Below, one piece after another: positions 335-56,353 of a stretch of DNA of 64,000 nt. Made by a program: the position numbers and the translations under genes. Position 1 is the stretch's first letter, and each line of letters starts with the position of its first letter. Where the stretch lies: positions 62,001 to 126,000 of the IMG/VR virus record IMGVR_UViG_3300027899_000001; one strand, written 5' to 3'. Below the pieces are notes generated by a model, which searched no databases, was not told the origin of the DNA, and saw only the letters and a list, made by a program, of their open reading frames with translations.

Positions 335-370
335 TTAAGCAGCCATTTGTAATGCGTAACTATTTTCGCC
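335..370 (-). other. tmRNA tag reading frame (A)GENSYALQMAA*
   Basis: GGC GAA AAT AGT TAC GCA TTA CAA ATG GCT GCT TAA, preceded by GTAAAC. Stop codon lies in a TGCTT/AAGCA hairpin. Resembles Bacteroidota GENNYALAA-type tags. Confidence 0.8.
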
Positions 371-548
371 GTTTACTTGCGTGTTGAGACATTCATTATT
401 TCCCTTAGTATACAATCTAAACCAAATCATCCCCATTAAAAGCAATATCTCTTTTATAAAGATTTGTGGAGATGGTGGGATCCGACCCCACGTCTTGCAT
501 ACCTACTCTATAACTAGCTCTTGCGAGCATTCTCAATATCTTAAAGAA

Positions 549-2907: not shown

Positions 2908-2941
2908 GTTAATTCTTTATTTATTTTATATATTTAATATT

Positions 2942-3646
2942 CTATTTAGTTTTATTTAGATTATTCCAATAAGTTCTATATATCATTTCTAGATTAGCTT
3001 TTTTGAAAGATTGTTTTGAATCAAAAAATGGAATATATTGCCATTCCTCATATTCTATCATTCTTAATTTACGAATATGATTAAGACTATAAGACCTATA
3101 ACCATAATTAAAAAGAGCGTTTTGTTGATCATTAAACATTTTAAAAATAGCAGGATTTTTTCCAGTTATTGCAGCAATTTGATATTCAGCGTTTAGTGCT
3201 AAAACATTGTACTCTGTATCTCTTTCTATATCTTTTAAAAACGGTTTATATAAATCATAATAGGCTTGAAAAAATTTTACTCTTTCGCCTTTAGGTAACA
3301 TATTTAAATTTATGCCTTTAACTAATTTATTAGAATAATCATATCTTGTACAAAATAATATTGGAGTAAAATCATGAAATGTAATAACTTTTCCTGTTTT
3401 TAAATTTTGTAACTCGTTTATATTAGTTTCATTTAAATGAATAAAAGTATATACCATTCCTTCTGCAGGTACTCCTCTCTTTACTCTATTTACAATAGAT
3501 TCTTGATCAGTAGATTCAATGTCTATTAATTTTTTAGAACCCTTTAAATCTAATTTAAGATAATTATCAAATAAACGCTCAAATGCAAGATCATTGATTC
3601 CATCTATTCGTTTTAATTTTTCATGTATTAATTTTGGATCTTCCAT
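2942..3646 (-). CDS. gp2: DNA end protector protein, T4 gp2-like
   Basis: HDFTPILF...GINLNMLPKGERVKF...YSLNHIR...EEWQYIPF; adjacent to gp4-like gene. Confidence 0.65.
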   Translation of the reverse strand: MEDPKLIHEKLKRIDGINDLAFERLFDNYLKLDLKGSKKLIDIESTDQESIVNRVKRGVPAEGMVYTFIHLNETNINELQNLKTGKVITFHDFTPILFCTRYDYSNKLVKGINLNMLPKGERVKFFQAYYDLYKPFLKDIERDTEYNVLALNAEYQIAAITGKNPAIFKMFNDQQNALFNYGYRSYSLNHIRKLRMIEYEEWQYIPFFDSKQSFKKANLEMIYRTYWNNLNKTK

Positions 3647-3648
3647 AT

Positions 3649-4269
3649 CTATGCATTATTTGAGGGCCAAAATCTTCCTATTAATTTTTGAAGAGTATCT
3701 TCTGTGAATACATAAAATTTTACGCCATTTTTTTCAGCATAAGCATTCATAGCAGCAAATTTAGCTTCATTAATTAAAAATTCTTTAGCATCTAAATTAA
3801 ATCTTTTCCATTCTTTTAACGGAGCATTTGGACCAGGAGGCACAGGTTTCTTAAGTTTATTGGCAGGCTTTATATCTAAAAACATTTTTTCTACTTTTCC
3901 TTCGCCTTTATCTATTTCAATCCAGAAATCAGTATTATAGTTTTTAACAACCCAATTTTTTGGATCATTGGGATTTAGTCCATATTTTTTGCATTCTTCA
4001 AGTTTAGATACTCTATCATAATATGGAACTTTAATTGGTTCTGAAGACCAACGTTTAACTGATGGAGAAAAATCACACCATCTACAAAATGATTTCTCCC
4101 AACCTGAACGATATATTACAAGATTAGGATCGCCTAGATATTTATCAGGATTTTGAACTTTATAATATCCTTGATAGGTTTCACCCTTTTTTAATTTTCC
4201 CGCTTCAGTAAAATTATTACGTTTGGGTGTATGCCATAATTTATAATTTTGATTTAGATTATCACTCAT
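3649..4269 (-). CDS. gp4: Head completion nuclease, T4 gp4-like (likely start MSDNLNQ at 4269)
   Basis: GYYKVQNPDKYLGDPNLVIYRSGWEKSFCRWCD...WSSEPIKVPY...YNTDF...DIKP. Confidence 0.85.
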   Translation of the reverse strand: MSDNLNQNYKLWHTPKRNNFTEAGKLKKGETYQGYYKVQNPDKYLGDPNLVIYRSGWEKSFCRWCDFSPSVKRWSSEPIKVPYYDRVSKLEECKKYGLNPNDPKNWVVKNYNTDFWIEIDKGEGKVEKMFLDIKPANKLKKPVPPGPNAPLKEWKRFNLDAKEFLINEAKFAAMNAYAEKNGVKFYVFTEDTLQKLIGRFWPSNNA

Positions 4270-39848: not shown

Positions 39849-40877
39849 ATGAGTTTAGAATTAACAGGAAAATATGTATCTTCCACCTATCTTAATTTAG
39901 TGCAGCATGCCAGCGATAATAATTATTATGATGGCGCTGGTAATTTACTTACAATAGGAAGTGGAATTCAAGGAATTCAGGGAATTCAAGGAATTCAGGG
40001 AATACAGGGAAATGATGGAGCTCAAGGAATTCAGGGAACTCAAGGAATAATTGGAATTCAAGGAACTCAAGGCATACAAGGAATTGATGGTACTCAAGGA
40101 ACTCAAGGTACTCAAGGAATTCAGGGAATTCAGGGTATTCAAGGAATAAATGGAATACAAGGAACTCAAGGTATTCAAGGAATAGATGGGGCTCAAGGAA
40201 CTCAAGGTATACAAGGAATTCAAGGAATAGATGGAACTCAAGGAACTCAAGGGATTCAGGGAACTCAAGGAATTCAAGGAATAACGGGTATTCAAGGTAC
40301 TCAAGGTATTCAAGGAATTCAAGGAATAGATGGAACTCAAGGAACACAAGGTATTCAAGGAATTCAAGGTACTCAAGGTATTCAAGGAATACAAGGGACT
40401 CAAGGAACTCAAGGTATTCAAGGAATTGATGGTGCACAAGGAGCTCAAAGTATTCAAGGAATTCAGGGAATACAAGGAATACAAGGAACAAGCCTTCTTA
40501 ATATAGTTGATGACACTACTCCACAATTAGGAGGAGAATTAGATGCACAAGCCCATTCAATAGGATTTACTCAACAAACTATCACTTATGATGTAACTAC
40601 AACTACAGTTGATTGGAAATTAGGTAATAAAGCTTCGATTACAGCAACAGGAAATATAGGAACATTTGCTTTTACTAATCCTTCTTATGCCTGTAATTTA
40701 TTATTAAAATTCATTCATGATGGAGGAGGCAGAACTGTTACAACTTGGGATACTGATATTAAATGGGCAGGAGCAACTCCGCCTACTTTAAGCACAGGTT
40801 CTGGAAACATAGATATTTTAAGTTTTTACTTTGATGGCACCAATTATTACGGTATGGCATCATTAAATTTTGCATAA
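39849..40877 (+). CDS. Collagen-like (Gly-X-Gln) tail fibre protein
   Basis: About 58 G-X-Y triplets (mostly GIQ/GTQ) then a beta-rich domain ending DILSFYFDGTNYYG. Confidence 0.8.
   Translation: MSLELTGKYVSSTYLNLVQHASDNNYYDGAGNLLTIGSGIQGIQGIQGIQGIQGNDGAQGIQGTQGIIGIQGTQGIQGIDGTQGTQGTQGIQGIQGIQGINGIQGTQGIQGIDGAQGTQGIQGIQGIDGTQGTQGIQGTQGIQGITGIQGTQGIQGIQGIDGTQGTQGIQGIQGTQGIQGIQGTQGTQGIQGIDGAQGAQSIQGIQGIQGIQGTSLLNIVDDTTPQLGGELDAQAHSIGFTQQTITYDVTTTTVDWKLGNKASITATGNIGTFAFTNPSYACNLLLKFIHDGGGRTVTTWDTDIKWAGATPPTLSTGSGNIDILSFYFDGTNYYGMASLNFA
39963..40493 (+). repeat. Degenerate 9-bp tandem repeat (ggaattcaa/ggaactcaa) coding the collagen region
   Basis: Directly visible in sequence. Confidence 0.9.
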
Positions 40878-40880
40878 TAT

Positions 40881-43800
40881 ATGGCAACTATTACTATAAC
40901 AGATTCAGGAGGAACACGAAACTGGAGCGATGCAGCTACTTGGTCTACAGGCGTTAAACCTACTGCAGCGGATGAGATCATAGCTACAGCTACAAGTGGT
41001 AATGTAACTATTAATGAAGCAGCCGTTTGTCGTTCTATGAATTTAACTAATTATACTAGTACTCTTACGCATAATGCATTTTCATTAACAATCGGCGATG
41101 GTACTGCGCCTACTGGACTTTTAGCATTAAAATTAGTTAGTACTTATTCTCCTAATGCAAGTTCATCTATTGTATTTACATCAAGCGCAGTAGGAGTCCA
41201 TACAGTTGATACTGGAGCTAAGACTATACAGGCAATAACATTTAATAATACAGGGTCTTATCAGTTTGTAACAAATACAATTACAGTAACAGGGAGTATA
41301 ACGCACACTAATGGCATAATTGATTTTAATGGATTATCAGCAACTATTGGAGCAAATTTACTTTCAACTGGTACATCTTCTCGTACCTTAACTTTAGGTG
41401 CATCTATTATTACTTTTACGGGTACAAGTTCTCAGCCCACCATTACAGGCTCAAATTTTAACATTACAATAAATTCAGCAACATTTATTTTATCTGGGAT
41501 TAGTACAGGATTTTCAACTGTTGATAGTACTAATTTTAATGGATTGAGTTTAAAAATAACGGGATCTGCAGGATCAATATCCTTTTATAATACTTGTACA
41601 ATTCAGAATTTTATAATTGATCCTACTACAACAAAAACAATTTCAATTACAGTAGGTAAAACTATTACTTTAACAGGTAATTTATATTGTCAACCTACTG
41701 CCGGTCAGGTAAAATTTACTACAGGATCAATATCTAAATCATCAGGAACAGTAAATCTTTATCAAGTTGCTGCATCATCTACTACTACTTTCACAGGAGG
41801 CGCTACATGGAATTTACGTAATAATTGTGATGTTGTTATTGCTGATGCTTCTACTTATGGTTTATCACGTTCATCACCAGGATATTCATACATTGATTAT
41901 GTGAATGGCTCAGATAATTTTTATACAGCTTATGGATTTCATAAAGTAGAGTATACAGATGCTTCAGGTGTTTGCCCTATAGAAGATGAGATAATGTTAG
42001 GAGGAACGAGCGGTAGCAGCGCGAAAGTTTCGTACATACGTCCTTTTGATTGGTCAACTGGTATCGGCACACTATATTTCAAAAGTAAAAGTGCGCCATT
42101 CACTGCTGAAACATTGACAGGACAAACTGGAGGAAGCACTTGTTCAATTGCAAAAGATACTAGTAGTGCTGCTTGGCAAACAATTACATCTGGTGCATTG
42201 GCAGCAAGAATTGCTCCCAATGATATTATATGTATAGCGCAATCTCCAGATTCATCTAGTATGGGAACAGCAGTTTGGACAGATCAATCTACAAATTTAC
42301 CAGCAAGTAAGACAATAACTACTTCAACGAATTCAGGCGGACTAGTCAACATTAATGTTAATGTATCAACTCATGGTTTTACTACTGGCGATGTTGTATA
42401 CATACAAGACCATTTAGGATCTTCAACTGTAAATGGATGTTGGAGTATAACTTCTGTAGATGCAAGTCACTTTACTCTTGATGGAGCAACATATGTTACA
42501 AATGGTACTCAAGGTACAGTAACGTTAGTTAATCGTTCGGCTGTTAAACTTACTACTGCTCAAACGTTAACAATAACAAGAAACGAAAATGCATGGACTG
42601 CTGGAGCATCAGGGGATGCAGTTGCTACTGTAGATGCATATAATCTTGATCGTAAAGAAGGTATGTATAGTACTAGAATAATATTAGATTCTGCAGTTCA
42701 AACAAATAAATTACAGGCATATTTTCCTGTTACTATCGCTGGAGTGACTCTTAACAATTATCAAAAACTTTCATTTTGGTTTAAAAATGATTCAGCAATA
42801 ACATGCGCCAATTCCACTACTTTTATGTGGTATGTTGCATTGTGCTCAGATTCATCTGGAGCAGTGCCAATAGACACATTTCCTATACCTGCTATTCCTT
42901 CATTAAATAGATGGGTTCCATTAACTATTCAACGTTGTGATACTTCTACAAATTCTTTTGTAGCCGGAGGCAATCTTGGTGGTAATACTTCAACTCAAAT
43001 TCAAAGCATTGCTATGTATTCTGGAGCCACTGCTCCTGCAAATAGTAGTAGAATATATATTGATAATTTTGTAGCATGTGTTAGTGCTGGGCTGAATCTG
43101 CAGAGTCTTATAAGTAAAAATGCTTCAACACAAGGTTACGATACTTCAATTAATTATGCAAACGAAGGATGGCATTGTATTCAAAGTATCAGTGAAGACG
43201 GAAAAATATTAAAAATAGATAATGATACAAATGCAATGGCAAATTTAAGCATTACAACAAGAGGAACAGGATATACAGGAACATCAGGTTTATTTACAAC
43301 ATATATGCGAGAGGCAATAAAAACTTCTCTTGCTTCAGGACAAACTACATCTGTTAATACTATTAATGATATTGGATTGGTTGGATTAAATATACAATAT
43401 CAATTTGGTTATAATCTAATTACAGGTTTGCAAACAGGCGAGACTTTCTTTGATGGGCTTAATGGCAATGGATATGGGATAAATTTTACTTCTATATCAT
43501 ATACTACTATTAATTATGCATCTTTCTGTAGATATTATACAGGTATCTTTTCTAATTCTGGTAATAGTAATATATTTTCTACTATTACAAATCTTTGCAG
43601 TAATACGTATGGCATATTTTTTCAATATGGTAATAATAATCTAGTTAATACAATAATTAACAGCAATAATAATGGAATTTATTCTGTATATCTTAGTTAT
43701 TGTAATAGTAATATTTTTAATAAATTAACACATTGTAATAGTAATTATAATTATGGTATTATATTTGTTAGTTCTATTTCAAATATCATAAATTTTGCAA

Positions 43801-44444
43801 GTATTAATAATAGTGGAACTTCAGCTATATATTATCAATATTCATCTGAAAGTATTATTCGAGAAATTAATTCTACTTATAATGCTCTTGCAATAACTAG
43901 TATATATGGCGGAACGCATTATATACAAAATTATATGTTAAATGATAGTATTGATTACCTGAATGGTAGTCCGGGTGTACAAGATAATTCTATGATTTAT
44001 TGTCAAAATTATAGATTAACAGGATATGAAAAAATATTTACAAATTATGCTACTATAGTTAGCCAAGCATCTACATTAACAAATGGTTCTGGAAAAGAAT
44101 GGAAAATAGAAGTTACTAACATTTTTAGAACTAGCGCATACCCTCTTCGTTTTCCTATAGCTAGAGTTGCTGTTGCTGCAAATTCAGTAGTAACAATTAA
44201 ACTTTGGATGAAAAAATCTCATGCAACAAATATTATTGCAAATCTTGTGTGCATGGAAAATCAAGTTGCAGGACTTACAACTCGTAACATAGCAACAAAA
44301 GCTAATAACACAGACGAAGAACAAGTTACACTTACTCTTGATAAACCCACAGAAACAGGAGTTATTGAGATAGAAGTACAAGCATACTGGGGCGGAGCTA
44401 CAGCAAATGTAATCTTTGATAAACTAACAATATCACAAGCATGA
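40881..44444 (+). CDS. Large tail fibre/tailspike-like receptor-binding protein with beta-helix-like repeats
   Basis: 1187 aa, Thr/Ser/Gly/Asn-rich; repeating N-N-x-x-G-I segments near the C-terminus; follows the collagen fibre gene. Confidence 0.6.
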   Translation: MATITITDSGGTRNWSDAATWSTGVKPTAADEIIATATSGNVTINEAAVCRSMNLTNYTSTLTHNAFSLTIGDGTAPTGLLALKLVSTYSPNASSSIVFTSSAVGVHTVDTGAKTIQAITFNNTGSYQFVTNTITVTGSITHTNGIIDFNGLSATIGANLLSTGTSSRTLTLGASIITFTGTSSQPTITGSNFNITINSATFILSGISTGFSTVDSTNFNGLSLKITGSAGSISFYNTCTIQNFIIDPTTTKTISITVGKTITLTGNLYCQPTAGQVKFTTGSISKSSGTVNLYQVAASSTTTFTGGATWNLRNNCDVVIADASTYGLSRSSPGYSYIDYVNGSDNFYTAYGFHKVEYTDASGVCPIEDEIMLGGTSGSSAKVSYIRPFDWSTGIGTLYFKSKSAPFTAETLTGQTGGSTCSIAKDTSSAAWQTITSGALAARIAPNDIICIAQSPDSSSMGTAVWTDQSTNLPASKTITTSTNSGGLVNINVNVSTHGFTTGDVVYIQDHLGSSTVNGCWSITSVDASHFTLDGATYVTNGTQGTVTLVNRSAVKLTTAQTLTITRNENAWTAGASGDAVATVDAYNLDRKEGMYSTRIILDSAVQTNKLQAYFPVTIAGVTLNNYQKLSFWFKNDSAITCANSTTFMWYVALCSDSSGAVPIDTFPIPAIPSLNRWVPLTIQRCDTSTNSFVAGGNLGGNTSTQIQSIAMYSGATAPANSSRIYIDNFVACVSAGLNLQSLISKNASTQGYDTSINYANEGWHCIQSISEDGKILKIDNDTNAMANLSITTRGTGYTGTSGLFTTYMREAIKTSLASGQTTSVNTINDIGLVGLNIQYQFGYNLITGLQTGETFFDGLNGNGYGINFTSISYTTINYASFCRYYTGIFSNSGNSNIFSTITNLCSNTYGIFFQYGNNNLVNTIINSNNNGIYSVYLSYCNSNIFNKLTHCNSNYNYGIIFVSSISNIINFASINNSGTSAIYYQYSSESIIREINSTYNALAITSIYGGTHYIQNYMLNDSIDYLNGSPGVQDNSMIYCQNYRLTGYEKIFTNYATIVSQASTLTNGSGKEWKIEVTNIFRTSAYPLRFPIARVAVAANSVVTIKLWMKKSHATNIIANLVCMENQVAGLTTRNIATKANNTDEEQVTLTLDKPTETGVIEIEVQAYWGGATANVIFDKLTISQA

Positions 44445-46265: not shown

Positions 46266-47228
46266 TTAGCTATTAAGTATAAATTTTGTATAATCTTTAT
46301 CGACAATCATTATATAATTAAAACCTTTAGAAATAGTAGCTTTTTGTTTTGCTTCTATAATTTTTTTATCTTTTTTTATAAGATATGAGTTTTTAATTTC
46401 AATTATAAGATTTAATGAAGGAATATAAAAATCAGGGAAATAAATTTTATTTTTATTATTATATCGATATTTAATCGAGGGCCCGTTTTTTAAATCTGGA
46501 TACATATTTAAAAATTTTTCAAGAAAATCTAATTCGTAAGAACCTCTATAATATATATCAATGTTTAAATATTTATGAGAATAATAAGCGCTTTTTTGTT
46601 GTTTTTCAAATATATTTTTAACTTGCCCAGGATATTCAACACCATATTTTTCTACATATATTTTTTTGATATCTTCTTTTATTTTTTTAGATTGAAATAC
46701 ATTATCTACACCCCATTTTTCTTTACAAGTTTTTTTTACTTTTTCTCTATTTGAATAATATTCATTTCCATATCTTTCTTTTTTTGTTTGTTTTGATTTT
46801 TCTTTTGATTTTTCTAATTGAAATGAATTTTCTACATCATAACGTTCTTTAAGTGTTTTTTTGCAGGTTTCCTGATTCCATCCATTGGGCACACATTTTA
46901 AAGAACAATATTTATTCGGCGCGCCTCTCGTAAAATTTACAGATTTTCCACAAGTTTTACACGTTGGCGTTCCGTATTTTTTAATATAATTTTTCTTTCT
47001 CCATTCTGGTCCTTTATGGCCTACTGCAAAATCATGAAAAATATTATCTCGATATTCGGGCATTTCATCACAATATCCGCATTTGCATTTTGGCGATATT
47101 CCATTTAATACATATTCTATATGATAATTCTTAGAAGATATATGATGGTGTTGTTTTAAATGATTATTAAATTTTCTTAAAGCTAAAAACTCTTCATTAC
47201 AAATTTGACATTTAATGTTTGATTTCAT
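46266..47228 (-). CDS. Free-standing endonuclease, family copy 4
   Basis: CQIC..H...HH; KYGVEYPGQ; YRGSYELDFLEKF...YFPDFYIPSLNLIIEIK; late promoter at 47230-47245. Confidence 0.75.
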   Translation of the reverse strand: MKSNIKCQICNEEFLALRKFNNHLKQHHHISSKNYHIEYVLNGISPKCKCGYCDEMPEYRDNIFHDFAVGHKGPEWRKKNYIKKYGTPTCKTCGKSVNFTRGAPNKYCSLKCVPNGWNQETCKKTLKERYDVENSFQLEKSKEKSKQTKKERYGNEYYSNREKVKKTCKEKWGVDNVFQSKKIKEDIKKIYVEKYGVEYPGQVKNIFEKQQKSAYYSHKYLNIDIYYRGSYELDFLEKFLNMYPDLKNGPSIKYRYNNKNKIYFPDFYIPSLNLIIEIKNSYLIKKDKKIIEAKQKATISKGFNYIMIVDKDYTKFILNS

Positions 47229-47304
47229 TTTTATTTTATATATTCATCTTAATTCAAAAATGTAATGAATGTGGTGTTAATTTTTTGTTAAGATTTTAAT
47301 TTTC

Positions 47305-48141
47305 TTATTGTGTTAAAAAACCTACTTTTTTAGGTACGGGTTTTGCGTGATTATCTGTTCCATAATAATAAATATCTGCAAGAGTCATAGGCTCTGTAAC
47401 ATTAATTTCTTTATGACCAAGTTTAACTAAAAGAGCTTTTGATTTTTCGATTGAAAGTTTTTCAAATTTATAATTCATTAAAAGTCTTCCTTTTCTTGTA
47501 AGAGCTTCATCTATATTCTTAGTTCCTGTGTTAAAGGTTGCTACTATAGAAATATTCAAACAATCTGAAAGTAAACCATCAGTAAGATTAAGAACATTAC
47601 TTACAGCAGAACTTCTTCCCCCATTATTTCTTTTTTCAAGAGCGGGTTCAGCATCTTCAATTATAAGAACTGAATCATTATTTCTCATAAGAAAAGGAAT
47701 AAAGGCTGGATCTGTAATAGAATCAACCATATCAGGAGATATGAAAATGATGTTCTTCTTAAGTTTAGATGTAAGATACCTAATATAAGTAGTATTATGA
47801 CTAATAATATTATTTGTATAATATAATTTATTAGAATCAACATCTAATTCTAAATCATACATATTTTCACGCTCATCTAATTTTATAACTTGTTGAACAT
47901 TTTCATATCCCGTTTTTGTTAAAATTATATCTCCTATTTTTAAGTTTTTTACATATATTTCAACATTATTATTTAATAATACAATGTGATTATCTGCACA
48001 TCTTAATTGATATTTATCTGTTTTTAAAAGATACACATCATATTTAATAGTTTTATGAATAGCATCAATATTAACCCATCCATCCGGAGTTAATACTTCA
48101 TAATCTTCTAATTTTTTAGATTTTATAAATTTTTTATTCAT
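47305..48141 (-). CDS. AAA ATPase C-terminal part, preceded by a 116-aa IntC (split intein)
   Basis: CADNH block B, MYDLEL, IISHN|TTYIRYL; then IIEDAE Walker B, LNLTDG, ALTRKGR. Confidence 0.9.
   Translation of the reverse strand: MNKKFIKSKKLEDYEVLTPDGWVNIDAIHKTIKYDVYLLKTDKYQLRCADNHIVLLNNNVEIYVKNLKIGDIILTKTGYENVQQVIKLDERENMYDLELDVDSNKLYYTNNIISHNTTYIRYLTSKLKKNIIFISPDMVDSITDPAFIPFLMRNNDSVLIIEDAEPALEKRNNGGRSSAVSNVLNLTDGLLSDCLNISIVATFNTGTKNIDEALTRKGRLLMNYKFEKLSIEKSKALLVKLGHKEINVTEPMTLADIYYYGTDNHAKPVPKKVGFLTQ
47794..48141 (-). mobile_element. IntC (116 aa) of an atypically split intein
   Basis: Ends His-Asn before Thr+1. Confidence 0.85.
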
Positions 48142-49039
48142 ATTTTATAAAGTTTATACATTTTAATAAAGTATTTTGATAATTAAATTTATTTAAATCA
48201 TCTTCCCAAATAATTAAAATTTTATATCCAAGAGATTGCAGCATTTCAATTTTAAATTTATCTTTTTGCCATATTTCTTTTGCAGTTAATATTTTAGTTT
48301 TACTTATTGCAATTATAGAATTTTCAAAATAATATTTAGGATTTGCGTGATAAAAATTGCCATTCAATTCTATTATTTTATTTTCATATAAAAGATCAAC
48401 ATAAAATCCTTTATTTTTATTATAACGTATCCATTTTTCTTCTATTCCAAAATAAAGTTTTTTATCTATATTATTTTGTAAATCATTAAAAAATTTTTCG
48501 GATAATTTACTATATCTTCTAAATAAACTGTTTCTTCTTCCTTTACCTCTTTCATGTGATAATATTTTTACTCGTTCCTCTCCAAATTTTTGTGTTAATT
48601 GATCTTTTGTTTTTCCACGAGTTTTATTAATTTCAATTCTTTCACTATCAGATTTTGAATAATATGTATTTTTTCTTTTCTGTAAAATATTATTTTTTTT
48701 CTCTTCAGAAAAATTATCTATAGAAAGTTTAGCCCTAACCCCATCTATCATTTTTTTTATTTCATCTGGATCAGTTATATTCTTTTTTATCCAATATTCT
48801 TTTTCCCATGGCATAAGCATATTTTCATAAGAATCTTTTGATCTTTTTTTTGCATTTTCAGATTGTATTTGTTTAATTTTTTCAATGGCTTCATTTTTAG
48901 AAAACCCGCGTTTAATCCAAAATTCTATGCAAAATCTAGAAGTTTCTTTTCTTTTTTGCAATGCAATATTTTCAGCTTCATTTTCATTGTATCCTTTTTT
49001 TATCCAATATTCTTTATCGTAAATAGTTATTTTTTTCAT
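48134..49039 (-). CDS. Vsr/DUF559-like endonuclease between the split-intein halves of the AAA gene
   Basis: KEYWIKKG repeats; FYVDL..ENKIIELNGNFYHANP...WQKD...IWE; late promoter at 49047-49062. Confidence 0.75.
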   Translation of the reverse strand: MKKITIYDKEYWIKKGYNENEAENIALQKRKETSRFCIEFWIKRGFSKNEAIEKIKQIQSENAKKRSKDSYENMLMPWEKEYWIKKNITDPDEIKKMIDGVRAKLSIDNFSEEKKNNILQKRKNTYYSKSDSERIEINKTRGKTKDQLTQKFGEERVKILSHERGKGRRNSLFRRYSKLSEKFFNDLQNNIDKKLYFGIEEKWIRYNKNKGFYVDLLYENKIIELNGNFYHANPKYYFENSIIAISKTKILTAKEIWQKDKFKIEMLQSLGYKILIIWEDDLNKFNYQNTLLKCINFIKYE

Positions 49040-49091
49040 AAATATTTTTATTTTATATATTCATGATTTTCATTAGCTGGAATACCAAAAA

Positions 49092-50012
49092 CTACATCAA
49101 ATCTGTAATATTTATTTCTTCTATTTTTCCTGTTTTTTTATTACGTATAGTTATTTTAGTATTATAACAAACACACTTACCTGTTCCTGGTTCACCCGGA
49201 AGAATAACGAGATTAGTTTTATCTTTACTATTGAGACCTGTAATTATTTCAGACGATATTTCTTCAAATCCATCATTATAATTTTCTTTTAAGTCTACTT
49301 TTATTTTCTTTACATCGAATCCTATTTTTTCAAATCCATGTTGATTTTTATATACAATATAGATTTTATTCTTTGTGATTTTAGGTTTTTTATGATTTTT
49401 TAATAAACTTAACAGTGTATGAAAAGTAGAATTTTCATTCTTTTCTGCACTTATATCATAATATATTGAGCCTTCATTAATTCCATCAAAAAATAACAAT
49501 AAATCTTTATCAAAGGCAATTAAAAGAGAACTTATTTTAGCTTCATTACTATCTTGAAATGATATCTTAAAAAAGCTATTATCAGGAACATTATAATACT
49601 TAAAAAGATTATTTATAAAATTACTTACATTATAATCTTCGAATCTAAAAATAGCTGGATAAAACCCATTAAGAAGTTGATAACGATATCCAAAATGATT
49701 CGTTTCAGAACAATATGAAAGATATGCTTCATCAGCATCAGCCATTTTTACAAAATCTCCAATAGGATAGAAATTAAGTTTAGGCTTATCTGAAAATTTA
49801 ATAGCTTTTATTTTATTAAAATCTACTGCAATATCTACAGAATCGCTAGTATTTTCTTTAGGTTCAATTTCTTCTCCGAATTCTTCAAATACTGAGTCAT
49901 CTATGTAATTTATATTCATATCTATAGGTTTATAATCTTTTAGTTTTAATTCATCAAAATATTCTTTATTCCAATGTCCATGATCATAGACTTTTATTTT
50001 CCTTCTAGCCAT
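49092..50012 (-). CDS. AAA ATPase N-terminal part ending in a 27-aa IntN
   Basis: ILPGEPGTGK|CVCYNTKITIRNKKTGKIEEINITDLM*. Confidence 0.88.
   Translation of the reverse strand: MARRKIKVYDHGHWNKEYFDELKLKDYKPIDMNINYIDDSVFEEFGEEIEPKENTSDSVDIAVDFNKIKAIKFSDKPKLNFYPIGDFVKMADADEAYLSYCSETNHFGYRYQLLNGFYPAIFRFEDYNVSNFINNLFKYYNVPDNSFFKISFQDSNEAKISSLLIAFDKDLLLFFDGINEGSIYYDISAEKNENSTFHTLLSLLKNHKKPKITKNKIYIVYKNQHGFEKIGFDVKKIKVDLKENYNDGFEEISSEIITGLNSKDKTNLVILPGEPGTGKCVCYNTKITIRNKKTGKIEEINITDLM
49095..49175 (-). mobile_element. IntN (27 aa) of an atypically split intein
   Basis: Cys1 immediately after the Walker A Lys; block A-like CVCYNTKI. Confidence 0.82.
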
Positions 50013-50500
50013 TTTTTTCTTTTTGCCGGTGAATCCCCAAATGCTATTTCAAGAAATCTATCAGCGCTTCTATCATTAATAACTGAGAATAATATCTTAT
50101 TGTTCATTACATTTTCCCAATCTTCTAATGAAAGAGAACCAAGTCCTTTAAGATAATTTACATTTGTTACTTTTGTTTTTTCTATAAATTCTGAATATTC
50201 TTCTAAAGTATAAAAATACTTTCTTTCTTTTCCAACTGTGCAAACTACTAATGGCGTTATTATTCTATAAAGTTTCTTCTTTTCAATTATATGAGGAAAC
50301 CATTTATGAAAGAAACTAATAATAAGAGAACTAATATGCTGTCCATCGCAATTATGTGCTAATATTTTTGTATTTTCATTTAAATAAACATAAAAGGTGT
50401 GACTATCTTTTACTGTTATATCATACATTATTAAATTTTTTCTATATTTTTTAATATTCGCGGGTTGCACTAATTTATATTTTGTTAAATCTATATTCAT
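49994..50500 (-). CDS. Topoisomerase II B-type subunit C-terminal part, preceded by a 50-aa IntC
   Basis: MYDITVKDSHTF...ILAHN|CDGQHISSL...YLKGLGS. Confidence 0.9.
   Translation of the reverse strand: MNIDLTKYKLVQPANIKKYRKNLIMYDITVKDSHTFYVYLNENTKILAHNCDGQHISSLIISFFHKWFPHIIEKKKLYRIITPLVVCTVGKERKYFYTLEEYSEFIEKTKVTNVNYLKGLGSLSLEDWENVMNNKILFSVINDRSADRFLEIAFGDSPAKRKKWLEGK
50351..50500 (-). mobile_element. IntC (50 aa) of a split intein
   Basis: YDI block F; ends His-Asn before Cys+1. Confidence 0.88.
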
Positions 50501-51489
50501 ATTTCTATTATTATATTTCTGTGTTTAATTTCATCTAATATTTGTAATAAATATTCTTCTGTAAGTTTTGTTGATTCCCATATAATTAATATTGCAATAT
50601 TTTTTTTGAATTCATGATTAAATAAATAATTAATTCTATTTTTATCTTTTTCCCAAATTTCATATGCAAATCTTTTCATTATTTTATGAAAATAATCTTT
50701 TGGATAATATTTAGAATTACAGTGCCAATAATCGCCATAAAATTCTATTATGATATTTAAATCCGGTATATAAAAATCTATTGCTCCATTTTTTCCAATT
50801 TCATTTTCATATTTATATTCTTCTACATAATAAATATTACATTTATTAAGAATATCACCAACTATTTTAGATTTAATAGATTTATTAGGCCCAAACGCGG
50901 AATGTTTCTTTTTTCTAAAAATATCATATTTTTCTAGGCCTTCAATTTCTCCATATTTTTCAATATACCATGATAATGTATTAGCTTTAGATATTTTAGC
51001 ATTTCGTTTTTCATATTTTTTAATACCTTCTTCTTTACCATATTTTTTAACATAATTTTCTAAATTAGCTCTCCATGTAAGCTCCCTAAATCCTTTACTT
51101 TTATCATGTTTAACATCAGTAATATTTTTTTTATGTAATAAACTTAAGTATAGAGAATTTGCGCCAATATGTTCAAATCTTTTTTTATCATACGGTTCAT
51201 TAAATATTTTTTGACTAATATTTTCTTTACATTGTAATGTATGACAAAAATATCCATCGTTATAACTTACTTTATACAATTTATTTTTATGATCAATTTC
51301 AAACGTTGGAATAGCATATTTATTGCAAAATCCGCATATTTCTAATTTAAAATTTGGAGTTAAATTTTTATAATATTTTTTAACATACTCATTAAGTAAT
51401 AAGTCGTGCACGCGTTTTACATGGGATCCTATATAAGTTCCATTATTAGTAACCTCTTTTCCGCAAATTAAACATCTAATCTTTTCCAT
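50497..51489 (-). CDS. Vsr/DUF559-like endonuclease between the split-intein halves of the topoisomerase gene
   Basis: CLICG; KKYGKEEG repeats; IDFYIPDLNIIIEFYGDYWHCN...IWE; late promoter at 51502-51517. Confidence 0.75.
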   Translation of the reverse strand: MEKIRCLICGKEVTNNGTYIGSHVKRVHDLLLNEYVKKYYKNLTPNFKLEICGFCNKYAIPTFEIDHKNKLYKVSYNDGYFCHTLQCKENISQKIFNEPYDKKRFEHIGANSLYLSLLHKKNITDVKHDKSKGFRELTWRANLENYVKKYGKEEGIKKYEKRNAKISKANTLSWYIEKYGEIEGLEKYDIFRKKKHSAFGPNKSIKSKIVGDILNKCNIYYVEEYKYENEIGKNGAIDFYIPDLNIIIEFYGDYWHCNSKYYPKDYFHKIMKRFAYEIWEKDKNRINYLFNHEFKKNIAILIIWESTKLTEEYLLQILDEIKHRNIIIEI

Positions 51490-51533
51490 ATGCTTTCCAT
51501 CTTTATTTTATATATTCATGACGGTTTTCATGT

Positions 51534-53267
51534 TTATTCTTTTTTAAGAAGTAAAAAATCAGTTTTTTTCAAATCTTTAGCAAAAATTTCTTGTAATTTT
51601 TCATTTCTACATACTATTAAAATATGATTTTCTGAACAAATTAATTTTTCATTATTAATTTCTATTTCAATATATTTTTCTTTTTTTGTTTTTATTATTT
51701 TTTCGATAGTTTTATATTCATTGGTGTGTGTTAAAATTTCATCATTATAGGTTAAATCTTTAATTTTTTTAAATCCATCTTTTGTAATAATTAAATGGTC
51801 TTCATCAAGACAATCTTCATCTGTAGCAATTATTATTTTGTCATAAACTGGTAATTTATCTTTGCCGGGTTCTATTTCAAGAATGCTCATTATATCTAAC
51901 CATTCAGCATTTCCTGTTAAATCTGATAATTTTCTTGCATTTTTAACCTTTCCTTTAAGAGCATATACTGCGTCAGTTTCAGAATCTCTTGCTTGTTTTA
52001 CTGAACCTGCTGCTGAAAGTCCTTCAGTAATATATATGCATCCCTTGTATTTTGAAGCAGGACTAAATTTATCAGATATCTTTCTTTTCGATTGCTTCTG
52101 AGCCTTTCTAATCTTAACTAAATTTTCATTATGGAGTCTATCTTCTATAGATTTTTCGATGCTTCTTGCTATATCAGATTTACTCAAGAATCTTATTAAC
52201 TTACTATGAAAAGATTCTTTCATCAATTCTTCTATTTCTCCACGACCTGTTGCAAATTTTGTTTTATTTTGGTCTGCAAATCTCATTAATTGCGACGGAA
52301 GATTAAGAGATATAAGAGTTTCATAGAAATGGTGAGCTAAATTATACTTAAAATATTCATTACCCCAATCATTAACTACTTTCTGATGTATTCCTGTACA
52401 GTTAGATCCATTAACAAATGATAAAGAACAAGAATTTTCATATGCTTCCCAAAGATATATTGTCCCCATATTGTTAGTTACAGTTATATGATCTTTAGGA
52501 ATAAAATCTGTCGTTATATCTATATCAAATTGTTTTCCTTCTTTTATAAAATATCCTTTGAAATCTAATTTATTAATAATAGGATCGTTCTTTATTAAGA
52601 AGTATTTGAATGAAAGATAAGTTGTTATTAAATCTATATCCCATTTAAGATCTAGAAATATTTTCTTTGATGGAATAAAGGTTATTTTAGTTCCAAGTTT
52701 ATCTGAAGATTCTTTTTTTCTTATTTCTTCATTTACTACTACGAAATCATCCCATGTAAATTTTACATAATGAGTTTTATTAACAGTAGTTACTGCGAAT
52801 TTCTCAGATAAAATATTAGTTACGGCAGCACCTAAACCAAAAGTTCCAAGTATATTAGTTGATGTATCAGTAAAATTAGAACCTGCGTGAAGTTCTTCAA
52901 GAGCAGTTCTTACTACATTTTTCTTTGTTTTACTATGTTTTTTAGCTGCATCATGAAATCCTAAACCTTCATCTATCACAATTATTTCATTATTATCAAG
53001 ATTAACTTTAACTGTAACATTTTTCATTTTACCCTTACATCGTTTAGCTTCATCTAAAGAATTTTCTAAAATTTCATAAAATAATTGATAAAATCCAGGT
53101 GAATATTTTTTTTCTAATGAAATTAATTTATTATTAATAACAAGCGGATATTTACTATCTTCTATTTCAGATATTTGCCCAACATAAAGAGTAGGCCTTA
53201 ATCGTATAGCGGTAAAATTATCTAACGCTATTATTTCTTTTGAATTTCCTGTATTATTTTTTAACAT
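51534..53267 (-). CDS. Topoisomerase II B-type (gp39/GyrB-like) N-terminal part ending in a 92-aa IntN
   Basis: EILENSLDE, DEGLG, GTFGLGA (GHKL), TEGLSA, ALKGKV, IIIATDED|CLDEDH. Confidence 0.9.
   Translation of the reverse strand: MLKNNTGNSKEIIALDNFTAIRLRPTLYVGQISEIEDSKYPLVINNKLISLEKKYSPGFYQLFYEILENSLDEAKRCKGKMKNVTVKVNLDNNEIIVIDEGLGFHDAAKKHSKTKKNVVRTALEELHAGSNFTDTSTNILGTFGLGAAVTNILSEKFAVTTVNKTHYVKFTWDDFVVVNEEIRKKESSDKLGTKITFIPSKKIFLDLKWDIDLITTYLSFKYFLIKNDPIINKLDFKGYFIKEGKQFDIDITTDFIPKDHITVTNNMGTIYLWEAYENSCSLSFVNGSNCTGIHQKVVNDWGNEYFKYNLAHHFYETLISLNLPSQLMRFADQNKTKFATGRGEIEELMKESFHSKLIRFLSKSDIARSIEKSIEDRLHNENLVKIRKAQKQSKRKISDKFSPASKYKGCIYITEGLSAAGSVKQARDSETDAVYALKGKVKNARKLSDLTGNAEWLDIMSILEIEPGKDKLPVYDKIIIATDEDCLDEDHLIITKDGFKKIKDLTYNDEILTHTNEYKTIEKIIKTKKEKYIEIEINNEKLICSENHILIVCRNEKLQEIFAKDLKKTDFLLLKKE
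51537..51812 (-). mobile_element. IntN (92 aa) of a split intein
   Basis: CLDEDHLI block A; CSENH block B. Confidence 0.88.
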
Positions 53268-54198
53268 AATTTTCTATAAATTCTTTATAGTTTTTATTTA
53301 AGATAAGAATATAATTATATCCTAATTTTTTTGTTGCTTTTTCTTTTTCAAAAATTTCATTTTCATTCATTTTTAAGGTATAAGATCCTTTTATTTCTAT
53401 TACTAAATTTTCAGATGGTAGATAAAAATCAGAATGATATACTCTATTTTTTCCATCAAGGTTATATTTTATAGACGGCCCATTTTGCATATCATTAAAT
53501 AAAGTATAAAAATTTTCTAAAAAGTCAAATTCATATGACGCTTGATACGTTAAATTACTATCTTTATATTGATGTAATAGCATCCTAGTTTTAAATGCTT
53601 TATCATATATTCCTTTATCTTGTAAAGGATTTTCGACTCCATATTTTTTTAAATAATGTTGTTTTAAATTATTTTGAATAATTTTGCTAGAATATGGATT
53701 TTTTGTTCCATAATTTTTTTTACATGTTTTTTCTGCTTTTAATTTAACATCTTTATTAGCTAATGTACATGCAGTTCCATATTTTTTTATATTAGTATTT
53801 TCAAGTTTATCTCTAACTATTTTTGATTTATTTGGATTATCTACTCCATAATTTTCTTTCCACGTTTCTTTCATTTTATTTTTACAATCTTCTCTTTGAA
53901 AATTGTTTTCTACTCCATAAGTGTGTAATAATGTTTCTTTTCGAGTTTCATTTGCAATTTTTATACTATGATTATTACAACAACCTTTAATATATCCATA
54001 AGCTAAACTTTTAAACTTAGTTTGTTTATTACATATTTTACATAATTCTTCGTTATCTTCTTTTAACCATTTATCAAAATATATTTTAGTGTTATCGTGC
54101 TTTCGTTGAATATGTTTACTTAAAGACATTAAATTTTTACATATTTTTTGGCATTCTTCACAAATATAAAAATCATTTTCTTGTTTAAATTTTTTCAT
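53254..54198 (-). CDS. Free-standing endonuclease, family copy 5
   Basis: CEECQK..H..RKH; YGVENNFQ; YQASYEFDFLENFY...YHSDFYLPSENLVIEIK. Confidence 0.75.
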   Translation of the reverse strand: MKKFKQENDFYICEECQKICKNLMSLSKHIQRKHDNTKIYFDKWLKEDNEELCKICNKQTKFKSLAYGYIKGCCNNHSIKIANETRKETLLHTYGVENNFQREDCKNKMKETWKENYGVDNPNKSKIVRDKLENTNIKKYGTACTLANKDVKLKAEKTCKKNYGTKNPYSSKIIQNNLKQHYLKKYGVENPLQDKGIYDKAFKTRMLLHQYKDSNLTYQASYEFDFLENFYTLFNDMQNGPSIKYNLDGKNRVYHSDFYLPSENLVIEIKGSYTLKMNENEIFEKEKATKKLGYNYILILNKNYKEFIENYVKK

Positions 54199-55312: not shown

Positions 55313-56353
55313 TCATATATTTAGAAGTTTATTAAATTGTGCATACTGTTTATCTAAAATTAAAATATAGTTATATCCTTCTTTTTTTACTGCGTATTCT
55401 TTCTCTTTAATTTTTTCATCTTTTTTAAAAAAATAGTTGCTTTTTATTTCTATTATTAAGTTTAAATCGGAAATAAAAAAATCGGGAAAATAAACGTGAT
55501 TATTATTTTCATATACATAATTTATTTTTGGCCCATTTAATATATTAACTTTTTCATAATAATTTTCTAAAAAATCTAATTCATATGTACCTTGATAATT
55601 TAAACTAGTATCTTTATATTGGTTAATTTGTAATCCTGATTTGAACCATTTTAAGCGTATTTCATCACTTTGAAATACATTTTCTACTCCGTATCTTTCT
55701 AAACATGTTTGTTTTATTTTATTTCTTACATCTTTTGATTTAAAGGGTGTATCTGTTCCATAATGTTTTAAACAAGTTTGTCTTGATTTTTCTTTAACAC
55801 TTTTAGACTGTATATGATGTTTATTACCATAACGTATTAACGATGTATTTTCTCCTTTTTCTCTAACTTCTTTATTTTTCCAAGGATGATTTTTGCCATA
55901 TCTTTTTTTATTTGTTTCTTCTGTTTTATTTCTTATTTCTTTTGATTTAAATGGGGTATCAACTCCAAATTTTTTTATACAAGTTTGTTTTGATTTTTCT
56001 CTATTACTATAATTTTCATCGCCGTATTTTTTGTTTTTTGTTTCTTTGCATTTATTTTTTATTAAATCATTCTGAAATACGTTTTCTACTCCATAAATTT
56101 TTAAATTCGTTTCCTTTTTTGTTTTTTCTTTTAATATTTTTAAACATCTTTTGTTTTTACATGTTAATTGATAACCTTTTTGAATAGATATAAATACTGT
56201 TTCTTTTCCACAAATTTTACATATACCATCACTATTATTTTTTATATACTTATCATAATAATGTTTTCCATTATGGCATTTTCTAATATGATGACTAAAA
56301 GATCTCCATGAATATAAAATTTTATTACATTCTTTACATTTAAAGTTTTCCAT
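55313..56353 (-). CDS. Free-standing endonuclease, family copy 6
   Basis: CKEC..HH.RKCH; YGVENVFQ repeats; YQGTYELDFLENYY...YFPDFFISDLNLIIEIK. Confidence 0.75.
   Translation of the reverse strand: MENFKCKECNKILYSWRSFSHHIRKCHNGKHYYDKYIKNNSDGICKICGKETVFISIQKGYQLTCKNKRCLKILKEKTKKETNLKIYGVENVFQNDLIKNKCKETKNKKYGDENYSNREKSKQTCIKKFGVDTPFKSKEIRNKTEETNKKRYGKNHPWKNKEVREKGENTSLIRYGNKHHIQSKSVKEKSRQTCLKHYGTDTPFKSKDVRNKIKQTCLERYGVENVFQSDEIRLKWFKSGLQINQYKDTSLNYQGTYELDFLENYYEKVNILNGPKINYVYENNNHVYFPDFFISDLNLIIEIKSNYFFKKDEKIKEKEYAVKKEGYNYILILDKQYAQFNKLLNI

What the first reader, a model, noticed from the sequence alone, without database searches (positions are those of the whole stretch)
47305..50012. AAA ATPase fractured at Walker A by an atypically split intein (27-aa IntN, 116-aa IntC)
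Seen: GEPGTGK|C... ends one ORF and ...SHN|TTYIRYL starts the extein of another, with a Vsr-like endonuclease gene in between; trans-splicing would restore GEPGTGKT. Known: fractured genes with split inteins and a free-standing endonuclease are described from environmental phages, and atypically split inteins with very short IntN (e.g. AceL-TerL) are rare and valued for protein chemistry, mostly from terminases. Inference: a new atypical split intein in a new host protein, with Thr+1.
Basis: partly seen in the sequence, partly recalled or inferred. Interest (0 to 1): 0.75.

Follow-up and report, generated by a model that had tools for sequence, protein, structure and literature searches.

The report
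Atypically split intein in phage ATPase
A jumbo phage from a freshwater metagenome carries an AAA+ ATPase gene cut in two inside its ATP-binding loop by a split intein with an unusually short 27-residue first half and a homing-endonuclease gene in between; it is a new member of a known but rarely described kind that is useful for protein chemistry.

Summary
On the minus strand, ORF 49092-50012 ends ...GEPGTGK|C plus 26 residues (27-aa IntN). ORF 47305-48141 starts with a 116-aa IntC ending SHN|TTYIRYL. A 301-aa Vsr-like endonuclease gene (48134-49039) lies between them.

About 56 contiguous, intein-free homologues read ...G(E)xGTGK-TTYIRYL... across the junction. At least 23 N-fragments carry an IntN tail (27 aa in 21 of them), and 57 C-fragments from other metagenomic contigs show the same fracture. 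All class-1 splicing residues are conserved and dN/dS is below 1. A complex model docks IntN into IntC (score 0.80, best control 0.01).

The closest solved relative of IntC is CatC, the engineered consensus of the AceL/GOS TerL atypical split inteins (E 3e-8). This is therefore a relative of the known atypical inteins, in a different host protein and with Cys1/Thr+1.

IntC alone finds 1090 protein clusters. They are mostly N-terminal, meaning split, and they sit in P-loop NTPases after GK. Some relatives are contiguous. One lineage is split without any endonuclease.

It is a new member of a known kind. Splicing itself is untested.

The parts
49176..50012 (-). N-extein of the AAA+ ATPase (residues 1-279 of the 306-aa ORF). 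It comprises an N-terminal domain of unknown function plus the first part of Walker A, ending GEPGTGK.
   Evidence: It aligns with the N-terminal 270-290 residues of contiguous 400-455-aa homologues that carry PF00004.
49095..49175 (-). IntN, 27 aa (CVCYNTKITIRNKKTGKIEEINITDLM). It contains only block A (N1) with the Cys1 nucleophile. The stop codon lies at 49092-49094.
   Evidence: 23 N-fragments from other contigs carry the tail, all starting with Cys. 21 are 27 aa and end in DLM; the other two are 29 and 26 aa. The shared pattern is C-[VI]-x-x-x-[TS]-[KR]-[IV]-x-[IV]-R-N-K-K-T. dN/dS is 0.14-0.27. IntN docks onto IntC in the complex model.
49044..49064 (-). Promoter-like 21-mer ATGAATATATAAAATAAAAAT, 5 nt upstream of the endonuclease start.
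   Evidence: there are 37 matches (up to 3 mismatches) in the 405-kb genome, and 35 sit directly upstream of an ORF start on the same strand. These include all three Vsr-like endonuclease genes and several DUF7487 genes. Promoter function is inferred.
48134..49039 (-). Free-standing Vsr-like (I-Bth0305I / EDxHD-type) homing endonuclease gene, 301 aa. Its stop overlaps the IntC start (ATGAATAA at 48134-48141).
   Evidence: It hits phrog_22677. Its profile aligns to Vsr with Asp/Glu/His/Asp in register. Invariant residues are E224, H231, D260 and W278-E279. Among relatives, 15/20 hit PF18741 and 7/20 hit DUF559. The AF2 model has pLDDT 84, and its top four PDB fold matches are 3R3P (I-Bth0305I) and Vsr 1CW0/1VSR, all with prob 1.00. 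NCBI names one homologue 'very short patch repair endonuclease'.
47794..48141 (-). IntC, 116 aa. It contains block B (C48-A49-D50-N51-H52), block F (N-M94-Y-D96-L-E-L) and block G (I-I-S114-H115-N116).
   Evidence: Invariant residues across 92 relatives are T31, A49, H52, M94 and D96; nearly invariant are C48, D50, S114, H115 and N116. PDB sequence hits: 6DSL_B CatC E 3e-8, gp41-1 E 7e-7, VidaL E 3.4e-6.
47308..47793 (-). C-extein of the AAA+ ATPase (162 aa). It starts with Thr+1, which is the Walker A Thr. It carries Walker B (VLIIEDAE), sensor-1 (ATFNT) and RKGR. The stop codon lies at 47305-47307.
   Evidence: Searches give the sequence. It is 76-86% identical to the C-terminal parts of most listed contiguous PF00004 homologues. 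It hits phrog_14322, phrog_33861 and phrog_7485. It is 42-49% identical to the 'ATPase' genes of the listed Pseudomonas and Xanthomonas jumbo phages, including PA5oct and XacN1.

Best explanation
The locus is a 'fractured gene'. A single phage AAA+ ATPase gene has been broken inside its Walker A loop (GEPGTGK|T) by a class-1 mini-intein. That intein is itself split at an atypical site, after block A, in the linker that follows the first small helix. A free-standing Vsr-like homing-endonuclease gene occupies the break.

The likely sequence of events is as follows. The two ATPase pieces are translated separately. The C-piece start overlaps the endonuclease stop. The 27-residue IntN tail of the first piece inserts into the incomplete 116-residue IntC at the head of the second piece and completes a HINT fold. 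Cys1 makes the thioester. Thr+1, which is the Walker A threonine, takes over the N-extein. Asn116 cyclises. The result is a 441-residue ATPase with an intact GEPGTGKT loop.

Before splicing neither piece can work. The P-loop lysine is on one polypeptide. The P-loop Thr, Walker B, sensor-1 and the Arg finger are on the other.

The endonuclease is the mobility engine of the cassette and is dispensable for splicing.

What is shown: the gene anatomy, the homology, the conservation of catalytic residues, the reconstitution of the junction in intein-free homologues, and the predicted docking. What is inferred: actual trans-splicing, the timing of expression, and homing.
For: - Anatomy and exact junctions.
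- About 56 contiguous intein-free homologues read through the junction without a gap or extra residue.
- The ATPase N- and C-exteins occur once only in the 405-kb genome, so there is no intact back-up copy.
- The same fracture is seen in at least 23 N-fragments and 57 C-fragments. Partners lie on the same contigs, judged by matching contig lengths, and directly in L002-L007.
- Cys1, block B His52, block F Asp96, His115-Asn116 and Thr/Ser+1 are conserved. The junction is HN in 146 of 150 relatives. The +1 residue is T (72) or S (40) in 112 of the 115 split-type ones.
- dN/dS against relatives: IntN 0.14-0.27, IntC 0.28-0.45, exteins 0.13-0.54.
- The complex model of IntC(1-130) with the N-ORF tail (266-306) scores 0.80 against a best control of 0.01. 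That mark was reached by 51 of 78 solved complexes and 2 of 108 mismatched pairs. The interface comprises residues 277-293 and 302-306 of the N piece against blocks B (46-53), F (92-97) and G (114-116) of IntC.
- IntC is homologous to the experimentally active atypical inteins CatC (AceL/GOS TerL consensus) and VidaL, and to gp41-1.
- Contiguous relatives have a variable 16-30-aa linker exactly where this intein is split. One of them, P0204, is in a GEPGTGK ATPase.
- The L006/L007 lineage keeps the split with only a 36-nt spacer and no endonuclease.
Against: - No experiment or proteomic datum shows the ligated product.
- The complex model may score high partly from memory of solved intein complexes. 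It shows likeness, not activity.
- Block B has Ala where most inteins have Thr/Ser (TxxH). This Ala is invariant in the family, so it is unlikely to be a defect.
- dS is near saturation, so the dN/dS values are rough.
- The function of the ATPase is unknown.
Confidence: 0.82

Rival explanations
1. The intein halves only hold the two ATPase pieces together non-covalently, like the HEG-derived interaction domains of the split Aeromonas phage NrdA. No peptide bond is formed.
For: Non-covalent assembly of an endonuclease-fractured phage gene is documented (PMC3045599, listed). The complex model speaks to binding only, not to chemistry.
Against: The break lies between Lys and Thr of the P-loop, with 143 intein residues in between, and an unspliced complex would leave these in the active site. 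Mere association would not need the conserved nucleophile and catalytic residues: Cys1 in 23/23 N-fragments, H52 and D96 invariant, HN in 146/150, and +1 Thr or Ser in 112 of the 115 split-type relatives.
Confidence: 0.07
2. The gene is a decaying relic. The endonuclease and intein invasion inactivated a dispensable ATPase, and the pieces are no longer functional.
For: The genome is heavily colonised by selfish endonuclease genes: 3 Vsr-like and 12 DUF7487. The ATPase function is unknown.
Against: Both pieces are full-length ORFs with no frameshifts. The exteins show dN/dS of 0.13-0.54 and 72-82% C-extein identity to the fractured relatives L002 and L004. The fractured arrangement is maintained over lineages that have diverged to 48% identity.
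Confidence: 0.05
3. This is an assembly or gene-calling artefact. In reality it would be a contiguous intein with an embedded endonuclease domain, or a chimeric contig.
For: The window is a metagenome-assembled virus record.
Against: The endonuclease has its own start and stop, a promoter-like motif, and a different frame. IntN ends in a stop that is conserved in all 23 N-fragments. Independent contigs from JGI, ENA and Logan samples show the same three-ORF layout. A second assembler reproduces the stretch with 0 differences.
Confidence: 0.01

Closest known systems
AceL TerL / GOS TerL atypically split inteins and their consensus Cat (PDB 6DSL). Sources: Thiel 2014 and Bachmann & Mootz 2015 as cited in PMC13014065 and PMC11766414, and the 'Terminase' locus of Dassa 2009, PMC2677866.
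   Same: - The IntN is short (25-37 aa there, 27 aa here) and carries only motif N1/block A.
- The IntC is long (104-122 aa there, 116 aa here) and carries all other motifs.
- The split lies at the 'S2' position after the first helix.
- The origin is phage or metagenomic.
- There is direct sequence homology: IntC residues 12-116 align to CatC 15-112 with E 3e-8.
   Different: - The host is an AAA+ ATPase, not a terminase.
- The insertion is after GK of Walker A, with Thr+1. AceL has Cys1/Cys+1 and GOS has Ser1/Cys+1 (table in PMC11766414).
- Block B reads CADNH, against CSDNH in CatC (alignment).
- This intein has not been characterised biochemically.
Fractured genes with a split intein and a free-standing Vsr-like or GIY-YIG endonuclease (Dassa et al. 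2009, PMC2677866).
   Same: The layout is identical: N-part plus IntN, then an endonuclease ORF, then IntC plus C-part, all on one strand. The endonuclease is of the Vsr-like family with Glu at the Vsr Phe62 position. The origin is phage. Gene-control elements come with the endonuclease.
   Different: The eight host types listed there do not include an AAA+ ATPase (0 occurrences of 'ATPase' or 'AAA'). All but the terminase locus are split at the canonical site between N4 and C2. Here the split is the atypical one.
VidaL and PolB16 OarG atypically split inteins (PMC13014065, PMC10189870).
   Same: They are naturally split, with a very short IntN (15-16 aa) and a long IntC. VidaL is detectably homologous to this IntC (E 3.4e-6).
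   Different: They are split at the S1 site (after strand beta2), one element earlier than here. The hosts are different. PolB16 is Ser1/Ser+1.
P-loop inteins of DnaB, MCM, RFC and phage terminases (Novikova et al. 2016, PMC4760082).
   Same: [quoted passage not shown]
   Different: Those described are contiguous inteins of cellular genomes or prophages. This one is split, atypically, and sits in a jumbo-phage AAA+ ATPase.

Membership tests
Class-1 intein (HINT splicing domain) | Nucleophile Cys/Ser at position 1 directly after the N-extein | tested here: met
   Cys follows GEPGTGK. Cys is present in 23/23 homologous N-fragments.
Class-1 intein (HINT splicing domain) | Block B TxxH with conserved His | tested here: met
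   The motif is C48-A49-D50-N51-H52. His52 is invariant in 92 relatives. The Thr position is an invariant Ala, a family-wide variant.
Class-1 intein (HINT splicing domain) | Block F Asp, and block G penultimate His plus terminal Asn, followed by Cys/Ser/Thr +1 | tested here: met
   The motifs are M94-Y-D96-L-E-L and S114-H115-N116|T. HN occurs in 146/150 relatives. The +1 residue is T (72) or S (40) in 112 of the 115 split-type relatives.
Class-1 intein (HINT splicing domain) | Sequence or fold homology to solved inteins | tested here: met
   phmmer against the PDB gives CatC 3e-8, gp41-1 7e-7 and VidaL 3.4e-6. Pfam Intein_splicing is only weak (E 1.9e-4, below the cut-off).
Class-1 intein (HINT splicing domain) | Catalyses protein splicing | not testable with these tools
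   This needs expression of both ORFs and detection of the ligated product.
Atypically split intein, S2 type (AceL/GOS TerL-like) | IntN of about 25-37 aa with only motif N1, and IntC of more than 100 aa with the remaining motifs, encoded by separate ORFs | tested here: met
   The halves are 27 aa and 116 aa, on separate ORFs 906 nt apart. IntC begins at the position equivalent to the CatC start. The break falls in the variable linker of contiguous relatives.
Atypically split intein, S2 type (AceL/GOS TerL-like) | The two halves associate to complete the fold | tested here: inconclusive
   The complex model scores 0.80 against a best control of 0.01. That mark was reached by 51 of 78 solved complexes and 2 of 108 mismatches. 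This supports binding but is a prediction and may reflect memory of solved inteins.
Fractured gene (Dassa 2009) | One host gene in two same-strand ORFs that together match contiguous homologues, with intein halves at the break and a free-standing endonuclease ORF between | tested here: met
Vsr-like / EDxHD homing endonuclease (I-Bth0305I family) | Vsr-type catalytic core with Asp, His and Asp equivalent to Vsr D51, H69 and D97, and Glu at the Vsr F62 position | tested here: met
   The alignment to Vsr puts D215, E224, H231 and D260 in those columns. E224, H231 and D260 are invariant and D215 is nearly invariant in 20 relatives. The E-values are weak (0.03-0.26).
Vsr-like / EDxHD homing endonuclease (I-Bth0305I family) | Fold like I-Bth0305I / Vsr | tested here: met
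   Foldseek on the AF2 model (pLDDT 84) ranks 3R3P_A and 3R3P_B first and second, and 1CW0 and 1VSR third and fourth. All have prob 1.00, TM by target 0.53-0.64 and E 5e-3 to 3e-2.
Vsr-like / EDxHD homing endonuclease (I-Bth0305I family) | Site-specific cleavage of the endonuclease-less allele, and homing | not testable with these tools
   The only support is indirect: presence/absence polymorphism (L006/L007 lack it).
AAA+ ATPase (PF00004) | Walker A, Walker B, sensor-1 and Arg finger in one polypeptide | tested here: not met
   As encoded, GEPGTGK is on the N-ORF. T, VLIIEDAE, ATFNT and RKGR are on the C-ORF. The feature would be met only after splicing. Contiguous homologues carry PF00004.

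The most novel reading that the evidence does not exclude
The atypical (S2) split may not be a rarity. It may be the prevailing state of a very large, essentially undescribed family of phage inteins that home to the GK|S/T position of P-loops in unrelated NTPases: T4-type terminases, DnaB-like helicases, AAA+/ClpB-like ATPases, ABC, PIF1, KaiC and clamp loader. In this reading the linker after block A is a second natural site for endonuclease insertion and intein breakage. The split state persists after the endonuclease is lost. The window's ATPase intein (Cys1/Thr+1, 27-aa IntN) would be one of hundreds of natural, mutually diverged short-IntN inteins available for protein semisynthesis.
Probability: 0.6. 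Interest if true: 0.6.

Novelty: new member of a known kind. Interest (0 to 1): 0.5.

Why it matters
- Protein chemistry: naturally split inteins with an IntN short enough for peptide synthesis are valued for protein semisynthesis and labelling. As of 2026 the literature names only a handful: AceL TerL, GOS TerL, VidaL and PolB16 (PMC13014065). This locus adds a Cys1/Thr+1 member in a new host. Dozens of natural sequence variants of both halves already exist, which makes consensus design possible.
- A wider reservoir: the search points to more than 1000 clusters of related P-loop inteins, most of them apparently split in the same way.
- Biology: the ATP-binding loop of a phage ATPase exists only after protein splicing, so activity depends on the two halves meeting.
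- Evolution: the contiguous, split-with-endonuclease and split-without-endonuclease states are all found among relatives. This gives a readable series for how inteins break.

Tried and rejected
- Pfam on the three ORFs gave only a sub-threshold Intein_splicing hit for the C-ORF. It gave nothing for the N-ORF or the endonuclease.
- PHROGs named none of the three ORFs functionally.
- phmmer of the 37-residue N-tail against the PDB found nothing meaningful, so CatN and AceL IntN were not retrieved. The IntN-to-AceL IntN likeness therefore rests on IntC homology and position, not on a direct IntN alignment.
- PMC4661395 (Bachmann & Mootz) is not held. I could not read the TerL insertion site of the GOS/AceL inteins.
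- The sigma-70 and terminator scan of 47000-53500 was no better than shuffles. The 91-nt region upstream of the endonuclease has no significant hairpin, with z -1.5. The hairpins Dassa 2009 saw upstream of endonuclease genes are not evident here.
- The lower dS of IntN, HEG and IntC (0.40-0.73) than of the exteins (1.15-1.31) against L002 hints that the cassette is younger than its host gene. The effect is weak against L004 and dS is near saturation, so I do not rely on it.
- Only one public run (freshwater metagenome, kept as contigs) holds the stretch. Population polymorphism for the endonuclease could not be examined.
- No GenBank phage record holds IntC joined to this ATPase: 0 of 331 matching records cover at least 80% of the C-ORF.
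Full report
**Observation.** The window is bases 62001-126000 of a 405,016-bp IMG/VR virus record with direct terminal repeats. It is a jumbo phage of about 27% G+C. One public run of a freshwater metagenome holds the stretch. Three consecutive minus-strand ORFs lie at 47305-50012.

- ORF 49092-50012 (306 aa) ends ...LVILPGEPGTGK. A 27-residue tail beginning with Cys (CVCYNTKITIRNKKTGKIEEINITDLM) follows, then a stop.
- ORF 48134-49039 (301 aa) is a separate gene.
- ORF 47305-48141 (278 aa) begins with 116 residues ending ...NNIISHN, followed by TTYIRYLTSKLKK....
- The lengths are N-extein 279, IntN 27, IntC 116 and C-extein 162.
- The endonuclease stop and the IntC start overlap (ATGAATAA).

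**Is it one gene in two pieces?** Searches of 5.8 billion proteins with either ORF give two kinds of relatives.

- About 56 are contiguous proteins of 400-455 aa that carry PF00004 (AAA). They match the N-ORF over its first ~280 residues and the C-ORF from residue 117 onward. They read straight through the junction. P0079, for example, has '...LVILPGETGTGKTTYIRYLTSKLKKNIIFISPDMV'. Removing IntN and IntC and joining Lys279 to Thr117 reproduces the homologues' sequence with no gap and no extra residue.
- The others are fragments with the same fracture. There are 23 N-fragments, all with a tail that starts with Cys. In 21 the tail is 27 aa and ends in DLM; the other two are 29 and 26 aa. There are 57 C-fragments of about 238-301 aa with a conserved IntC.
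- Partners lie on the same contigs. This follows from equal contig lengths, and is seen directly in L002-L007.
- The phage has only one copy of either extein. It has no intact back-up gene.
- As encoded, GEPGTGK is on one polypeptide. The Walker A Thr, Walker B (VLIIEDAE), sensor-1 (ATFNT) and RKGR are on the other.

**Are the flanks an intein?**

- IntC gives a sub-threshold Pfam Intein_splicing hit.
- It gives clear sequence matches to solved inteins: CatC, the consensus of the atypically split AceL/GOS TerL inteins (6DSL_B, E 3e-8, IntC 12-116 aligned to CatC 15-112); gp41-1 (E 7e-7); and VidaL (E 3.4e-6).
- The class-1 splicing residues are all present and conserved: Cys1 (23/23), block B C-A-D-x-H with invariant His52, block F M-Y-D96, and block G S-H115-N116 followed by Thr.
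- The usual block B Thr is an invariant Ala in this family.
- Pairwise dN/dS against three relatives is 0.14-0.27 for IntN and 0.28-0.45 for IntC. The values are rough because dS is near saturation.
- A complex model of IntC(1-130) with the last 41 residues of the N-ORF scores 0.80 against 0.01 for the best control. That mark was reached by 51 of 78 solved complexes and 2 of 108 mismatched pairs. The IntN N-terminus lies against blocks B, F and G.
- The model supports binding and likeness to known inteins. It does not show splicing.

**The split site.**

- IntN holds only block A, and IntC holds everything else. Dassa et al. noted the same arrangement as the single exception, the terminase locus, among their fractured genes (PMC2677866). 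It was later exploited as AceL TerL (25/104 aa) and GOS TerL (37/115 aa) (PMC11766414).
- A 2026 paper lists the natural atypical split inteins as AceL TerL, GOS TerL, VidaL and PolB16. Their split sites are S1 (after beta2) or S2 (after alpha1) (PMC13014065).
- This IntC starts at the position equivalent to CatC.
- In an alignment with contiguous relatives, the break falls in a variable 16-30-residue linker after the ...I-x-D-[LF] segment. This is the S2 type.

**The intervening gene.**

- A four-sequence profile aligns its C-terminal ~75 residues to E. coli Vsr. D215, E224, H231 and D260 fall in the columns of Vsr D51, F62, H69 and D97. This is the pattern Dassa et al. gave for their Vsr-like homing endonucleases, including Glu at the F62 position.
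- E224, H231 and D260 are invariant and D215 is nearly invariant in 20 relatives.
- Of those relatives, 15 hit PF18741 and 7 hit DUF559.
- The profile also touches 3HRL, Vsr and I-Bth0305I weakly.
- An AlphaFold2 model has mean pLDDT 84. Its four best PDB fold matches are I-Bth0305I (3R3P A and B) and Vsr (1CW0, 1VSR), all with probability 1.00.
- NCBI names one homologue 'very short patch repair endonuclease'.
- The gene is preceded by a 21-mer (ATGAATATATAAAATAAAAAT) that recurs directly upstream of about 35 genes of this phage, including all its endonuclease genes. This is a likely phage promoter; that function is an inference.

**Relatives elsewhere.**

- In L002/L003 and L004/L005 the layout is the same: N-piece, Vsr-like gene, C-piece. 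It lies next to an intact topoisomerase II gene.
- In L006/L007 (a 344-kb contig) the N-piece ends ...GDPGTGK|CVEGKS...EDLM. The IntC gene follows after a 36-nt spacer with no endonuclease. The split state therefore does not depend on the endonuclease.
- A profile-free search with IntC alone against 1.84 billion cluster representatives found 1090 clusters at E <= 1e-3 and 515 at E <= 1e-10.
- Among the best 150, the domain sits at the very N-terminus in 115, which means they are split in the same atypical way.
- It is internal in 35. Several of these are contiguous mini-inteins that follow ...GK|C. Examples are terminases with SRQxGK|C, and P0204, a GEPGTGK|C ATPase with C-extein TTLIRKL.
- The junction is HN|T or HN|S throughout.
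- Of 92 scanned, 52 carry Terminase_6N, 13 DnaB_C and 5 AAA. Single cases carry ClpB-like AAA_2, ABC_tran, PIF1, KaiC and a gp44 clamp-loader lid.
- The window's intein is thus one branch of a large family that sits after GK of P-loops. P-loops are a known intein hot spot (PMC4760082).
- In GenBank phages the IntC-like domain occurs in terminases. It is contiguous in Vibrio phage Kuja. In Salicola phage SCTP-2 it lies at the start of a terminase piece.
- No deposited phage has it joined to this ATPase.

**Mechanism proposed.**

1. The two precursors are made separately.
2. IntN folds onto IntC.
3. Cys1 undergoes an N-S acyl shift.
4. Thr+1 attacks the thioester.
5. Asn116 cyclises and an O-N shift gives the peptide bond.
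6. The product is a 441-aa AAA+ ATPase with an intact GEPGTGKT loop.

These steps follow the established class-1 pathway and are inferred here. The endonuclease presumably cuts endonuclease-free alleles and spreads the cassette. The only support for that is the presence/absence polymorphism and a weak hint of lower dS for the cassette.

**Rivals.** All three are unlikely.

- Non-covalent assembly only. The conserved catalytic residues would not be needed, and 143 intein residues would stay inside the P-loop.
- A decaying gene. The ORFs are intact, the exteins are under purifying selection, and the arrangement persists over deep divergence.
- An artefact. The layout is reproduced on many contigs and by a second assembler.

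**Novelty and score.**

- The fractured-gene layout, the Vsr-like endonuclease, P-loop insertion and the S2 atypical split are all known.
- New here are the host protein (an AAA+ ATPase of unknown role, called 'ATPase' or 'AAA+ ATPase and BCS1 domain protein' in jumbo phages), the Cys1/Thr+1 pairing in an S2-type split, and the size of the family behind it.
- I rate it a new member of a known kind, with interest 0.5. It has real practical value for intein engineering and is a tidy evolutionary series, but it would not surprise a specialist.

Noticed in passing
window 49994-53267 (-): The neighbouring topoisomerase II large-subunit gene is also fractured, but by a canonical split intein. The N-part (51534-53267) ends ...ATDED|C plus about 92 aa of IntN. 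A second Vsr-like endonuclease gene lies at 50497-51489. The C-part (49994-50500) starts with a 50-aa IntC ending AHN|C. The same gene is intact (601-602 aa) in relatives L002 and L004. An atypical and a canonical split intein therefore sit side by side.
   Followed up: partly
L010 (G000:C1:131000-142500, outside the window) 1321-3899 and 7523-10987: There is a third fractured gene. An IMPDH/GMP-reductase-like N-part ends ...IGTG|C, a Vsr-like endonuclease lies at 1984-3015, and the C-part starts with an IntC ending VHN|S. An 1154-aa ribonucleotide reductase carries a contiguous intein (Pfam Intein_splicing 53.6 bits). The phage has at least four inteins.
   Followed up: partly
window 46266-47228, 53254-54198, 55313-56353 (-) and nine more in the genome: There are twelve paralogous DUF7487 / phrog_3339 'homing endonuclease' genes in the 405-kb genome. 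Three flank the fractured genes in this window.
   Followed up: partly
window 49044-49064, 47227-47247, 51499-51519 (-) and about 34 other sites genome-wide: A conserved 21-mer, ATGAATATATAAAATAAAAAT, has 37 matches at up to 3 mismatches. Of these, 35 lie immediately upstream of an ORF start on the same strand. It is probably a phage promoter class and precedes every endonuclease gene checked.
   Followed up: partly
window 335-516 (-): The phage encodes a permuted tmRNA. Rfam RF04321 scores 64.5 bits (gathering threshold 47). ARAGORN calls a tmRNA at 244-556 with tag peptide GENSYALQMAA.
   Followed up: no
L006 3294-4834 (ENA contig of 344,710 bp): In a distant relative the same ATPase is split by the same intein, but the two halves are adjacent genes separated by 36 nt with no endonuclease. 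The first bases after the IntN stop (TAGTTTTT..CCAG) resemble those in the window.
   Followed up: partly
window 39849-44444 (+): A collagen-like tail-fibre gene (342 aa, many PHROG tail-fibre hits) is followed by an 1187-aa ORF with no PHROG hit. They lie on the opposite strand to most genes, in a local G+C-rich island (0.33-0.35 against about 0.27).
   Followed up: no
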